64,000 nt of DNA from Stylophora pistillata (lineage: Eukaryota): assembly GCF_002571385.2 (NCBI RefSeq), contig NW_019218148.1, forward strand, positions 10,226 to 74,225, read 5' to 3'. The translations under genes and the position numbers were made by a program. Positions 38,055 to 58,176 of the stretch are shown here, one piece after another (position 1 is the stretch's first letter; the number at the start of each line of letters is the position of its first letter). Below the pieces are notes generated by a model. The model was not told the DNA's origin and searched no databases. It saw only the letters and a program-made list of their open reading frames with translations.

Positions 38055-41000
38055 ATGCACAGGAAGAAAGCGGGGAAGTTTTTGTTTATTCCTGATAATT
38101 TGGTGGTTGTACTATTCTTAATTGCCCTTTTAAACATAGCTTCAACGGAGTTACACAAACCATTACCGGTCAAAGGTAAGTGGCACTGAATGTCTACCGA
38201 ATTAATACAGATGTAATATAATACCATCAGTCTAAGTGAATTTCCATCATGAAACATTATCCCGGTGTCCTCAAGGAATTATTAAAGCTATTAAAAACAG
38301 TTTACGCGAGAAGGGGTGGAGACGAACATAGAATGAGGCGAAGAAAAAGATTTATGGCCAAAACTTTATAGCCAAAACAGGCAGCAGCAATTACTTCAGT
38401 AGAGAAATAGGTAGAGTTAAGCGCCTCAACACAACAAGGAAGTTAGTGAATGAGTTGGCATGTGATTGTAGGTGCAGGGCGTGCAGGGCGAGCAAGGCGT
38501 GCAGGGCGTGCGCAAGATTGGAAAGCCATCCTCAGTTGATCGAGAAACCTCTTACCACAAGTTTCGCTCAGTCGAAGGGCTAACGCTGGCTCGAAACGTC
38601 AGCTTTGAAACTTTTAAAGGTGGCCAGTTTATATCATCAACTCAGTTGATAAAATCAAAATTACCTCGTTACTTCCACCGACGTAGCACCACAGTTTATT
38701 TAGAAACTTACCCTCTTTATTCATACCTCTTACCACGACTCTGTTTAGTCTGATAACCCTTTCAATTCTTCACACTGTTTGCCTTACAACTCTCATGCCT
38801 TAAGATAGAGTTTGGTGTTAAATTTAAAGATATAGTCGGATATAAGAAATTTTTTTAATACTTATGCCTTTCTGTTTAAAATGTATTGGTATAGTAGATC
38901 AGTTTCAGTTTCTGAGCAACTGCACACCTACTCCTCCCAGAAACCAACAACAGTCAGCTGATAACAACTGAAGGTTCATGTTAGGGGAGGGGTAAGTACA
39001 CAGTTGCTCAGATACTGACATTGATCCGATGTTACAACGACAAATTAATTCTGGTCACTTTTTATCTAGGTTGAAATTTAAAAAATCTCTAGTGTACAGG
39101 TTCTAATCATTGGCTATTGACCAGCGTAGTTCGTAGCGCCTAAATAATATCCTCATTTCTTATATAAAAAAAAGGAACACGCGCCCAACGTGGGGCTCGA
39201 ACCCACGACCCTGAGATTAAGAGTCTCATGCTCTACCGACTGAGCTAGCCGGGCGATTGTTATCCACAAAGGTGGTGGTACTAAGTGTGAAGCAAGAAGC
39301 GTTAATGGACATTGCAGGGTTTGCCGAAATTAACACAATAGTGGGCGGTTGTGAAATAAACGGGGGTCTTTTAATTACAGGAAAAGCATCAGACTTGGAC
39401 GCTATTATAGAGTCTCTCCTTCCTGAGGAAAAAAGTATAGTTAAGAGGCAAGGCAAGGGTATGTGTCTTAACTGAATTAGAAAACATTGCATTGGGTATT
39501 GAGTTCCTTGAGGGGGGGGGGGGTTTACTGAAAACGTATTAAGCCACGCTGTCTTATTTCAGCTTTACATTCATTGGTCATGTGTTTCCCTGTCCCTGTT
39601 TTACCTCTTAATTAATGGCAAAATGAACTTTGGGAATTGCAAACAGTGTCGCTAACAAAATAATCAATCCGCCTTTCCAATCGTTCACCTGTCCCTTGAT
39701 CAGTAACAAGAGGAAAGTGGCAATCTGTACCTAATGCCCTTCGACAATGCCGAATTTTCTAGATGAAGGTGAGAGCGACAGTGAAGAAATAAACGAACTG
39801 AGCCGCCTTCAGGACCCGGGAAGTCAGGACCCGCAGGTAGGTGGTGCCATAAATGAAGGCGATGCAGGCAAGATCAAGCCTACCATAGACAACTCCATGG
39901 TTCCGAGTGATCAAAACCAGTCTGCCTCGGATACGTTGGCTAATATAAGTGAATTTCTCAAAAGCAAGGAAGGTGAAACCGCAGATCCAGGTGAGTAAAT
40001 TCAATTCGTTTGCTACTGTTATTTCAACGTTACACTGATTCACGAGTTTGGGAGTCTTTGAGGGAAAAGATTTTGCCCATCAACCTCCAAGAGTGACCAG
40101 CAGGTTACTTCTCCGTACAATTTCAACCCAAAATCATACATTTAGTTCACAAGAATAAAGGAAATGATCAGCACCTATAAAAGCTCTCGATTGTTAAACA
40201 AATTTTCCTTGTCAGCACCTTAGGATGTATGGACAATAATGGAGAATATGCATACTGACATAAAGACTTAAAACACTAAGAACGGTTTCTCTTGTTTTCT
40301 CGGCTCTTTGTCATTTTAGTGGATGGCGACTTCACTCTATGGACCACGTGGTCGTCATGTCCTCACGCTTGTGGAAGAACTGCACTGAGGTCACGTGAGC
40401 GATATTGCACCAATCCAGCGCCTGCAAATGGCGGGAGAAACTGCGAAGGACCGCGTTTTCAACTTAAGCTTTGTAAACTCAAGCAGTGTGCAGGTATGAT
40501 GGAAGCCAGGAGCCTATTACCCGGAGCTTCCCTCTTCCATACTGACCCTCTGAGTCAACCCTGTCCCGTATCTTTCTATTTTTAGAAGCACCTCCCCCGG
40601 CGGTTTTCGCGGGTGTTTTTATAATAGCCAATCATAAGAGAGCTGTCGTCTCTATTGTGTTACGTCTCTATTGTGTCACTTGCAGGCCGCACGAAATTAT
40701 ATCAATAATGGCGGAAAGCGCAGAAAGATTAAAGAACCCCCGCAGATATCTCAGTTCTAAAAATGAAAAGATACGGGACAGGGTTGACTCAAGGGTACAA
40801 CTGAGATGGCAGCTGCGGGTAATGGGTTCCTGTGGAAGCTTATCAATTTATTAACAACGGATGAATCCCAGGTTAAATTAAGAGACGCCTAAGCGCCAAT
40901 TAAAACTAGCAGGCTTTCGTAACGCCCTTTTCCTAGACCGTAAGCTCTTCTCCTTTTCAATAGGAGGGTAAACACGAAAAGAATAGGATCATTTGATTTA

Positions 41001-58176: not shown

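What the first reader, a model, noticed from the sequence alone, without database searches (positions are those of the whole stretch)
38055..58176. Tandem pair of secreted TSP1 + 6-Cys module + Asp-rich-tail genes: candidate undescribed matrix/biomineralisation family
Seen: two adjacent same-strand genes that the ORF track only fragments. Both splice into the same order: signal peptide, long low-complexity region, 2-3 TSP1 repeats, 2-3 copies of a shared 6-Cys module, and a very Asp-rich last exon. Their linker regions are unalignable, so the duplication looks old and the layout is what was retained. Known: Asp-rich secreted proteins (CARP/SAARP type) and TSP1- or vWA-containing adhesion proteins occur in coral skeletal organic matrix. 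Inference: these proteins could couple an adhesion module to a Ca2+/CaCO3-binding tail.
Basis: partly seen in the sequence, partly recalled or inferred. Interest (0 to 1): 0.75.

Follow-up and report, generated by a model that had tools for sequence, protein, structure and literature searches.

The report
Anthozoan TSP1 proteins with acidic tails
Two neighbouring coral genes encode adhesion-type proteins carrying an unnamed six-cysteine module and an aspartate-rich tail, but close relatives with such tails occur in a skeleton-less sea anemone and in soft corals, so they look like general matrix proteins rather than dedicated skeleton builders.

Summary
The observation largely holds. Both + strand genes are real.

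- **Gene 1 (38055-45392):** signal peptide, short acidic region, 2 TSP1, 3 six-Cys modules and an Asp/Lys-rich tail. A database protein from a 2.4-kb contig (P0187) matches all eight exons and joins module 3 directly to the tail. The N gap (43395-43749) therefore lies inside an intron.
- **Gene 2 (~47646-58176):** a ~978-aa basic exon, 3 TSP1 and 2 modules. I found no signal-peptide exon for gene 2.
- **Third paralogue:** it lies on another contig with the same layout.

The module has no match in Pfam, NCBIfam or PDB sequences. Only 119 of 1.84 billion representatives match it. It is a reduced form of an unnamed 8-Cys repeat found in rotifer, amphioxus, hemichordate, euglenid and myxobacterial proteins.

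The biomineralisation reading is weakened. Gene-1 orthologues with Asp-rich tails occur in Exaiptasia and in octocorals. The whole gene-1 protein is not acidic (pI 8, 15.6% D+E). The skeletal-proteome passages I read list other TSP1 architectures.

Another first-reader note (s1-791808) covers the same stretch.

The parts
38055..38175 (+). Gene 1 exon 1: ATG and signal peptide (MHRKKAGKF..LVVVLFLIALLNIAST)
   Evidence: P0187 residues 1-40. Donor at 38175 and junction to 39763 reproduce P0187. The signal peptide is read by eye: basic n-region, hydrophobic core, and ASA/VSA at the cleavage position in orthologues.
39299..39451 (+). Gene 1 alternative cassette exon (approximate limits), '..DLDAIIESLLPEEK..'
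   Evidence: Present in P0017/P0189/P0190 and absent from P0187. tblastn of P0017 residues 24-65 lands here.
39763..39990 (+). Gene 1 exon 2: acidic low-complexity region
   Evidence: 100% identity to P0187 residues 41-116. Phase-1 GT..AG junctions.
40320..40493 (+). Gene 1 TSP1 repeat 1
   Evidence: PF00090 E 1.2e-8. 100% identity to P0187. Junctions.
41036..41206 (+). Gene 1 TSP1 repeat 2
   Evidence: PF00090 21.8 bits against a cut-off of 21.6 on the partial ORF. Two PF00090 stretches in orthologue P0017. Junctions.
41662..41823 (+). Gene 1 six-Cys module 1
   Evidence: Junctions. 98% identical to the Oculina copy.
42293..42451 (+). Gene 1 six-Cys module 2
   Evidence: 100% identical to the Oculina copy over 48 columns.
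42963..43115 (+). Gene 1 six-Cys module 3
43395..43749 (.). Assembly gap, inside intron 7 of gene 1
   Evidence: One search shows the N run. Junction 43115|44908 reproduces P0187 residue 390.
44908..45392 (+). Gene 1 last exon: Asp blocks alternating with 'RISKLMSSKL'-type segments, then a basic end, then the stop
   Evidence: 98.8% identity to P0187 residues 390-550. Composition.
47646..50579 (+). Gene 2 long exon (about 978 aa, basic, 23 NxS/T sequons). The 5' limit is inferred only.
   Evidence: ORF. Homologues. Candidate phase-1 acceptor at 47646 and donor at 50579. pI 9.97.
51434..51616 (+). Gene 2 TSP1 repeat 1 (limits inferred)
   Evidence: PF00090 23.3 bits. Match to P0004. Phase-1 splice sites.
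52977..53144 (+). Gene 2 TSP1 repeat 2 (limits inferred)
   Evidence: Translation. Match to P0004 residues 939-1011. Splice sites. Not scanned against Pfam on its own.
53414..53602 (+). Gene 2 TSP1 repeat 3 (limits inferred)
   Evidence: PF00090 E 3e-10. 79% identity to P0004. Splice sites.
54306..54464 (+). Gene 2 six-Cys module 1 (acceptor inferred, donor shown by RNA)
   Evidence: Joint 54464|55174 in X2, X3 and X24. RNA contigs also run upstream of 54306 (unexplained).
55174..55335 (+). Gene 2 six-Cys module 2
   Evidence: Joints on both sides. Frame.
56126..56294 (+).
   Evidence: Joints in X2 and X3. Frame. 86% identical to P0150.
57603..57694 (+).
   Evidence: Joints in X2, X3 and X24. 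Frame. Present in P0150.
58010..58176 (+). Gene 2 last exon: poly-Asp tail (43% D, 52% D+E) and stop
   Evidence: Joint 57694|58010 in X2 (1 contig) and X24 (1 read). Frame. Conserved in P0004 and P0150. Composition.

Best explanation
These are two expressed members of a three-gene family in this coral. The family is old and found across Anthozoa.

The proteins are modular extracellular proteins of the TSP1-repeat (TSR) superfamily. Gene 1 has a signal peptide; none was found for gene 2. Each has a disordered N-terminal region, 2 to at least 10 TSP1 repeats, and 2-3 copies of an unnamed disulfide-rich six-Cys module. Each module sits on its own phase-1 exon. Each protein ends in a disordered charged tail.

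Most likely they act as matrix or matricellular bridging proteins.
- The TSP1 repeats bind sulfated glycans or cell-surface receptors. This follows from general knowledge of TSRs.
- The six-Cys modules are almost invariant in gene 1 across corals, so they probably make a specific protein contact (inferred).
- The tail gives low-affinity electrostatic or Ca2+-dependent binding (inferred). In gene 1, Asp blocks alternate with basic amphipathic segments, and a basic end could fold back on the Asp blocks or bind polyanions.

The Asp-rich tail of the gene-1 lineage predates stony-coral skeletons, so any role in calcification would be a later co-option.

Shown: gene structures, splicing, expression, conservation, and the absence of a named family for the module. 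Inferred: secretion of gene 2 and every binding role.
For: - TSP1 exons by Pfam.
- Module: 6 Cys invariant in 100 sequences.
- Gene 1 is fully matched by P0187, which comes from a 2389-nt contig although the gene spans 7.3 kb.
- Gene 2's 3' exon chain is shown by GT..AG joints in RNA runs from three studies. It is in frame and is repeated in the relative's protein P0150.
- In raw-read run X24 the first mates lie mostly on the - strand at exons. This fits a + strand RNA in the usual stranded design.
- A third gene on C360 has the same order: 10 of 10 scanned ORFs are PF00090, followed by 3 modules and an acidic ORF.
- Gene-1-type proteins with 2 TSP1 motifs, 3 modules and 15-23% D tails were found in all 10 examined: the window species, Pocillopora, Oculina, Desmophyllum, Acropora, Porites, Exaiptasia, Dendronephthya, Xenia and one unnamed.
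- The module-1 clade (support 96/91) and the module-3 clade (92/99) each hold hexacoral and octocoral copies.
- The Nematostella protein P0020 has a clear signal peptide, low-complexity region, 4 TSP1 and 2 modules.
- The cnidarian TSR survey describes a large 'TSR-only, properdin-like' class. These proteins would fall into it, because domain databases see only the TSRs (passages).
Against: - There is no functional, localisation or binding data of any kind.
- Gene 2's start and signal peptide were not found.
- No spliced RNA contig covered the TSP1-to-module joints of gene 2. In X2 the 3' exons are roughly 12-30 times deeper than the TSP1 exons, and contigs run upstream of the module-1 acceptor. 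A shorter 3' transcript may therefore exist.
- X3's contig leaves 57695-58009 unspliced, and X1 showed no joints at all.
- The Oculina model P0004 skips the two small exons.
- A calicoblast or skeletal role is not excluded: one passage says adult calicoblasts express 'thrombospondins', and the supplements were closed.
Confidence: 0.6

Rival explanations
1. One reading: these are skeletal organic matrix proteins. TSP1 repeats and modules anchor them to matrix or cells, and the Asp-rich tail binds Ca2+ or CaCO3 at the calcifying front.
For: - Asp runs are present and conserved in all scleractinian orthologues.
- Gene 2's last exon is 43% D. The poly-Asp tail of the gene-2 lineage was seen only in corals (window, P0004, P0150), while the Nematostella relative has 4% D.
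- A cell-atlas passage says adult calicoblasts express 'thrombospondins'.
- TSP1-bearing adhesion proteins are regular skeletal-proteome components (passages).
Against: - Gene-1 orthologues in non-calcifying Exaiptasia (18% D tail) and in Xenia keep the Asp-rich tail.
- The whole proteins are neutral to basic, with pI 8.0 and 9.3.
- The TSP1 skeletal proteins described in the passages read carry vWA or mucin4 parts, which are absent here.
- No paper holds the orthologues' accessions in its main text.
Confidence: 0.15
2. The six-Cys modules are the active part. They act as small inhibitor- or ligand-like domains, for instance against proteases or as binders of a signalling factor, and the TSP1 repeats and tail only localise them in the matrix.
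For: - The distant 8-Cys relatives sit next to protease-inhibitor domains: two Kunitz domains in the Myxococcales protein P0122 and a TIL domain in the Entosiphon protein P0118.
- Modules 1 and 2 of gene 1 are 98-100% identical between this coral and Oculina. This fits a precise molecular target.
Against: - Domain neighbourhood in far relatives is weak evidence.
- There is no sequence match to any inhibitor family.
- No structure is available.
Confidence: 0.12
3. They are structural or adhesive components of stinging capsules (cnidocysts) or of mucus. This fits gene 2 and the C360 gene especially, because they have long glycosylation-rich regions.
For: [quoted passage not shown]
- Gene 2's long exon has 23 NxS/T sequons.
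- The Exaiptasia orthologue is named 'Mucin-like protein' by its source.
Against: - No expression data were mapped to these genes.
- The name is automatic.
- Only anthozoans were seen among the named hits with the six-Cys form.
Confidence: 0.08

Closest known systems
Cnidarian 'TSR-only / properdin-like' secreted proteins (class described in PMC5446238; passages read)
   Same: A signal peptide is followed by TSP1 repeats, which are the only domains that databases recognise. The class is expanded in anthozoans.
   Different: These proteins also carry 2-3 conserved six-Cys modules and a charged tail. That survey's passages do not mention either feature.
Thrombospondin-1/2 (the automatic RefSeq names of the orthologues)
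   Same: They have TSP1 repeats. They are secreted, and the tail has calcium-binding potential.
   Different: There are no EGF repeats, no type-3 repeats, no C-terminal TSP domain and no N-terminal LamG. Pfam sees only TSP1-type families in P0017. The survey states that cnidarian thrombospondins lack TSRs altogether.
Coral acid-rich skeletal proteins (CARP/SAARP) and TSP1+vWA skeletal proteins (coadhesin type)
   Same: They have Asp runs in a disordered segment and TSP1 adhesion repeats.
   Different: The whole proteins are not acidic (15.6% D+E, pI 8.0). There is no vWA or FA58C domain. Asp-rich tails are already present in non-calcifying relatives. Presence in skeleton is unknown.
Unnamed 8-Cys 'C..PC....C...P.A.C...CGGC.A.F' repeats in proteins of Rotaria, Branchiostoma, Saccoglossus, Entosiphon and a Myxococcales MAG
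   Same: Profile-profile probability is 98.7%, E 4.3e-16, over 43 columns. HMMER E-values reach 1.4e-19. The PC, P.A and aromatic motifs are shared.
   Different: The coral module lacks two of the eight Cys: the first one, and the first Cys of CGGC. That family also has no Pfam, NCBIfam or PDB match and no known function.

Membership tests
Thrombospondin family (TSP-1/2) | TSP1 (type 1) repeats | tested here: met
   PF00090 above its cut-off in window exons and in P0017.
Thrombospondin family (TSP-1/2) | EGF-like repeats, type-3 calcium-binding repeats and the C-terminal TSP domain. This list of defining features is recalled. | tested here: not met
   A Pfam scan of the full orthologue P0017 at E<=0.1 lists only TSP1-type families.
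CARP/SAARP acidic skeletal proteins | Highly acidic composition: >35% D+E as the classic bound, or >14.5% D+E with pI <4.5 in the preprint (passage) | tested here: not met
   P0187 whole protein has 15.6% D+E and pI 7.97. P0004 has pI 9.33. Only gene 2's 54-aa last exon reaches 52% D+E.
CARP/SAARP acidic skeletal proteins | Found occluded in skeleton by proteomics | not testable with these tools
   The protein lists are in supplements, which were closed. Main-text searches for the orthologue accessions found 0 papers.
Coadhesin / TSP1-and-vWA skeletal proteins | vWA (and FA58C) domains beside the TSP1 repeats (passages) | tested here: not met
   No vWA or FA58C in P0017 or P0020, nor in the window exons scanned.
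Properdin-like TSR-only proteins | A signal peptide plus TSRs and nothing else | tested here: not met
   Beyond the TSRs there are 2-3 conserved six-Cys modules and a conserved tail. Domain databases would still file them here.
EGF / follistatin-N (FOLN) / Kazal small disulfide domains | Sequence match to the family profile | tested here: not met
   0 of the 5 window modules match any Pfam family at E<=1. Among 100 members there is no EGF or FOLN match, and Kazal_2 matches 1 of 100 at E 0.0097.
EGF / follistatin-N (FOLN) / Kazal small disulfide domains | Fold and disulfide pattern | not testable with these tools
The Atlas holds no model. PDB sequence searches returned 0 matches.
Unnamed 8-Cys CGGC repeat superfamily | Significant profile similarity over the whole unit | tested here: met
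   hhalign probability 98.7%, E 4.3e-16. P0021 has E 1.4e-19 in 11 stretches and P0022 has E 3.2e-19 in 8 stretches.
Unnamed 8-Cys CGGC repeat superfamily | All eight cysteines present | tested here: not met
   The coral modules keep six. The alignment puts a 2-residue gap at the first Cys of CGGC, and the N-terminal Cys lies outside the module.

The most novel reading that the evidence does not exclude
The six-Cys module is a new extracellular binding fold, derived by paired loss of one disulfide from a widespread but unnamed 8-Cys domain. The gene-1 protein would then be a previously unrecognised, near-invariant pan-anthozoan matrix signal or adaptor. Its Asp-block/basic-helix tail would act as a Ca2+-sensitive switch. 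Stony corals would have re-used this ancestral Ca2+-binding matrix protein at the calcifying surface.
Probability: 0.15. Interest if true: 0.7.

Novelty: new variant of a known kind. Interest (0 to 1): 0.42.

Why it matters
It marks out a conserved, expressed but unstudied protein family of corals, anemones and soft corals that annotation pipelines mislabel as 'thrombospondin-2-like', 'SCO-spondin-like' or 'mucin-like'.

It also points to a disulfide-rich domain absent from Pfam, NCBIfam and the PDB sequence set, with distant relatives from bacteria to amphioxus.

For coral calcification research the result is a caution. An Asp-rich tail on a secreted adhesion protein is not by itself evidence of a skeletal role, because the tail of the gene-1 lineage predates the skeleton.

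The family offers a clean test of co-option. The same protein could be compared in Exaiptasia or Nematostella and in a stony coral.

Tried and rejected
- **ESM Atlas:** it did not hold the part of P0017 that I asked for. The whole stored homologue P0136 gave only one lead at 0.78 (a 'THSD8' cluster) and has no model. I rejected this as uninformative.
- **PDB by sequence:** 0 matches for the module profile and 0 for the 8-Cys protein P0022, at E up to 10.
- **Pfam on 100 module-bearing sequences:** only scattered weak hits. The largest were DUF7023 and a CCCH finger, each in 4 of 100. I took these as noise.
- **NCBIfam:** nothing on the repeats.
- **Source contigs of P0017:** I relied instead on the contig lengths printed. 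The claim that P0187, P0017 and P0150 are transcript-derived therefore rests only on contig length against gene span.
- **Signal peptide of gene 2:** two hydrophobicity scans of ATG-started ORFs in 45393-47650 gave nothing convincing.
- **Literature:** 0 papers for six orthologue accessions and 0 for 'thrombospondin-2-like' + coral. I read passages only, not whole texts, of PMC5446238, PMC12549020, PMC8086859, PMC3748352, PMC8162421, PMC8382919, PMC4890752 and bioRxiv 10.64898/2026.03.24.713908. None of the passages describes this architecture. Their supplements may list these genes and could not be seen.
- **LSKL / RFK motifs:** these are recalled from the thrombospondin-1/latent TGF-beta literature. 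[LI]SKL occurs in 6 of the 11 tails checked and RF[KI] in 9 of 11. Neither occurs in the octocorals, and [LI]SKL is absent from Acropora, Porites and Exaiptasia. I rejected this as a family feature and kept it only as a curiosity.
- **Module tree:** only 4 of 23 inner branches were well supported, and the join of gene-2 module 2 with the Nematostella module is weak (43/25). I make no claim on the order of the gene duplications.
- **Species:** I did not name it. By exon identity to Pocillopora proteins (81-100%) it is a pocilloporid-like coral. Any closer guess would be recall.
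Full report
**What is there**

The window is AT-rich eukaryotic DNA with short exons. On the + strand between 38055 and 58176 lie TSP1-type exons. Pfam PF00090 matched 4 of the 10 ORFs I gave it.

There are also five copies of a roughly 50-residue module with six cysteines. A pattern scan of all six frames of the 64-kb window found these five and no others. Their alignment has C, P-C, C, C, C, F and C invariant at 31-44% identity to the first copy.

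This is not chance. A profile of the five finds 9 places in the whole 398-Mb assembly (13 candidates scored). Five are the window copies (E 3.5e-24 to 1.3e-20), three lie on contig C360, and one weak 8-Cys variant lies on C101.

**The gap**

N runs from 43395 to 43749. It lies after module 3 of gene 1 and before the acidic ORF.

A stored protein, P0187, has 550 aa and its longest source contig is 2389 nt. It matches the window exon by exon. Exons 2, 3 and 6 are 100% identical and the tail is 98.8% identical.

All seven junctions can be placed at GT..AG sites in phase 1 so that the flanking peptides and the junction residue reproduce P0187. The junction 43115|44908 spans the gap and gives Ala, which is residue 390 of P0187.

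The gap is therefore intronic, and the frame does not depend on it. Both sides are in the order and strand of the transcript. The gap could still hide an alternative exon, and I did not look for its letters.

That P0187 is transcript-derived rests on contig length (2.4 kb) against a 7.3-kb gene.

**Gene 1 (38055-45392)**

- Exon 1 codes a signal-peptide-like start (read by eye; orthologues have ASA/VSA at the expected cleavage position).
- A cassette exon near 39299-39451 is present in P0017, P0189 and P0190 but skipped in P0187.
- Then come an acidic 76-codon exon, two TSP1 exons, three module exons and a 161-codon last exon.
- The tail has 17% D, 27% D+E and 22% K+R. Asp blocks alternate with 'RISKLMSSKL'-type segments, and the last 50 residues have pI 11.
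- The whole protein has pI 8.0 and 15.6% D+E.

**Gene 2 (~47646-58176)**

A 994-codon ORF has homologues in other corals (16 proteins at E<=0.001). One is the Oculina patagonica model P0004 (1237 aa). It shows the whole order: low-complexity region, 3 TSP1, 2 modules and a poly-Asp end.

I laid four RNA runs from four studies on 52600-58599. The GT..AG joints were:

| Joint | X1 | X2 | X3 | X24 (raw reads) |
|---|---|---|---|---|
| 54464\|55174 | none | 1 contig | 1 contig | 2 reads |
| 55335\|56126 | none | 1 contig | 1 contig | none |
| 56294\|57603 | none | 1 contig | 1 contig | none |
| 57694\|58010 | none | 1 contig | none (see below) | 1 read |

- X3's contig runs unspliced from 57601 to 58037.
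- X1 showed only low-depth contigs collinear with the genome.
- Two further joints (54969 to 55174 in X2, and a non-canonical 58513 to 58548) lie at repeats.

The real chain is therefore module 1, module 2, a 169-nt exon, a 92-nt exon, then the poly-Asp exon. Every exon is open in the frame that the phases require.

They are conserved in a relative's stored protein, P0150 (291 aa, contig 1922 nt), which reads straight through to the poly-Asp end. The Oculina model skips them. Together they are 261 nt, so the frame holds either way.

The TSP1 exon limits and the start of the long exon are inferred only from phase-1 splice sites and homology.

I found no ATG-started hydrophobic exon for gene 2 between the two genes. 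Its signal peptide is unproven.

In X2 the 3' exons are roughly 12-30 times deeper than the TSP1 exons. Contigs in X2 and X3 run upstream of the module-1 acceptor, to 54151 and 54203. The relatives' proteins P0018 and P0150 do the same. In raw-read run X24 the depth is about even across the exons. A shorter 3' transcript may exist, and I could not resolve this.

**A third gene**

On C360 (- strand) I read two long low-complexity ORFs (695 and 860 aa). After them come 11 ORFs that look like TSP1; I scanned 10 of them and all 10 match PF00090. Then come three modules and, about 300 nt after the last module, a 173-codon ORF with 21% D. Its splicing was not tested.

**Relatives**

The module profile was run against 1.84 billion representatives. 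It found 119 proteins at E<=0.001, 78 at E<=1e-10 and 3 at E<=1e-30. Most are short unnamed fragments.

Named relatives:
- 'thrombospondin-2-like' of Pocillopora damicornis and P. verrucosa, and an unnamed P. meandrina protein
- Oculina, Desmophyllum, Acropora millepora ('thrombospondin-1-like') and Porites lobata proteins
- Exaiptasia 'Mucin-like protein'
- Actinia 'SCO-spondin-like, partial'
- Dendronephthya and Xenia 'thrombospondin-2-like'
- Nematostella LOC116616159

All 10 gene-1-type proteins that I parsed have 2 TSP1 motifs, 3 modules and a tail with 15-23% D. This includes Exaiptasia (18%) and Xenia (15%). The Nematostella gene-2-like protein has 4 TSP1, 2 modules and a Gln/Glu/Gly-rich tail with 4% D.

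In a module tree, the module-1 copies of gene-1 orthologues from hexacorals and octocorals group together (support 96/91). The module-3 copies do so as well (92/99). The three-module array is therefore older than that split. Most other forks are unresolved.

Modules 1 and 2 of gene 1 are 98% and 100% identical to the Oculina copies.

**What the module is**

- No Pfam family matched the five modules at E<=1.
- No family matched more than 4 of 100 members.
- NCBIfam gave nothing, and the PDB sequence search gave 0 matches.
- Weaker hits of the big search are tandem 8-Cys repeats ('C..PC....C...P.A.C...CGGC.A.F') in proteins of Rotaria sordida, Branchiostoma, Saccoglossus, Entosiphon and a Myxococcales MAG. 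All are uncharacterised.
- I compared the coral profile with 27 such units from 6 proteins; two further proteins gave no unit by my pattern. The local profile-profile comparison gives 98.7% probability and E 4.3e-16.
- The coral form lacks the first Cys and the first Cys of CGGC. I infer that those two pair with each other in the 8-Cys form.
- Two of the far relatives carry Kunitz or TIL inhibitor domains. This is a weak lead to function.
- The fold could not be predicted.

**How it most likely works**

See Best explanation. In short, I favour modular extracellular bridging proteins of the TSR superfamily, in which the modules give a specific contact and the tail gives electrostatic or Ca2+-dependent binding. 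Only structure, splicing, expression and conservation are shown. The binding roles are inferred from general knowledge of TSRs and of Asp-rich disordered segments.

**Against the biomineralisation reading**

- Asp-rich tails are present in orthologues from a non-calcifying anemone and from soft corals.
- The proteins as wholes are neutral to basic. The preprint passage I read sets >35% D+E for 'highly acidic' skeletal proteins, or >14.5% D+E with pI <4.5.
- The TSP1-bearing skeletal proteins named in the passages I read are TSP1+vWA proteins and mucin4-like proteins. Neither part is present here.

**For the biomineralisation reading, or left open**

- Poly-Asp in the gene-2 lineage was seen only in corals.
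- A cell-atlas passage says adult calicoblasts express 'thrombospondins'.
- The tables that would decide this are in supplements, which were closed.

**Novelty**

The genes are already auto-annotated in related species, so their existence is not new. Two things appear not to be in print, as far as and the passages read can show:
- recognition of the family layout
- the unnamed module and its link to an unnamed 8-Cys domain

The cnidarian TSR survey would have filed these proteins under 'TSR-only'.

Another first-reader note of this scan (s1-791808) flags the same five modules on this same stretch. Word searches of earlier findings gave nothing on other DNA.

I rate the finding a new variant of a known kind, of moderate interest.

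Noticed in passing
window 39181-39254 (-), 41448-41521 (-), 42674-42746 (-): Two intact tRNA-Lys(CTT) genes and a third, weaker tRNA-like element (Rfam 46 bits, not called by ARAGORN) lie antisense inside introns 1, 4 and 6 of gene 1.
   Followed up: partly
G000 contig C360, about 242273-260212 (- strand); loci L012, L013: A third paralogue with the same order: two long low-complexity ORFs, at least 10 TSP1 exons, three six-Cys modules and an acidic ORF (21% D) right after the last module. Splicing was not tested.
   Followed up: partly
G000 contig C101:92503-92637 (+); L011:4516-4596: A single ORF carries the 8-Cys (CGGC) form of the module in this coral genome. It has no Pfam match, and its gene context was not examined.
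   Followed up: no
window about 54926-54957 and about 58485-58530: Two short segments, one in an intron and one downstream of gene 2, have RNA depths in the thousands in all four runs, with loose ends on both sides. They are probably pieces of very abundant or highly repeated transcripts. No Rfam match at gathering score.
   Followed up: partly
window 54151-54305: RNA contigs of X2 and X3, and the relatives' stored proteins P0018 and P0150, continue upstream of the canonical acceptor of the module-1 exon. In X2 the exons from here to the 3' end are roughly 12-30 times deeper than the TSP1 exons, while depth is even in raw-read run X24. This could be an internal start, a retained intron or 3' bias.
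   Followed up: partly
window 44149-44751 (-) and 56800-57348 (+): Transposon-like ORFs sit in the introns just before each acidic last exon. One looks like a reverse-transcriptase tail by eye and has no Pfam match. The other has a weak GIY-YIG match (E 0.0054, below the cut-off).
   Followed up: partly
tails of gene-1 orthologues (for example window 44908-45392): [LI]SKL occurs in 6 of the 11 tails checked, and a terminal 'SRFK'-type motif (RF[KI]) in 9 of 11. These are the same short motifs recalled from thrombospondin-1 activation of latent TGF-beta. They are absent in octocorals, and [LI]SKL is absent in Acropora, Porites and Exaiptasia, so this is probably coincidence.
   Followed up: partly
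window 31217-34407 (+), 60850-62250 (+), 35514-35612 (+): Flanking genes, read by eye only: exons that look like a transporter of the organic-cation type upstream, and a 466-aa ORF with two RING-like Cys clusters downstream. A short poly-Asp-like tblastn match lies at 35514-35612.
   Followed up: no
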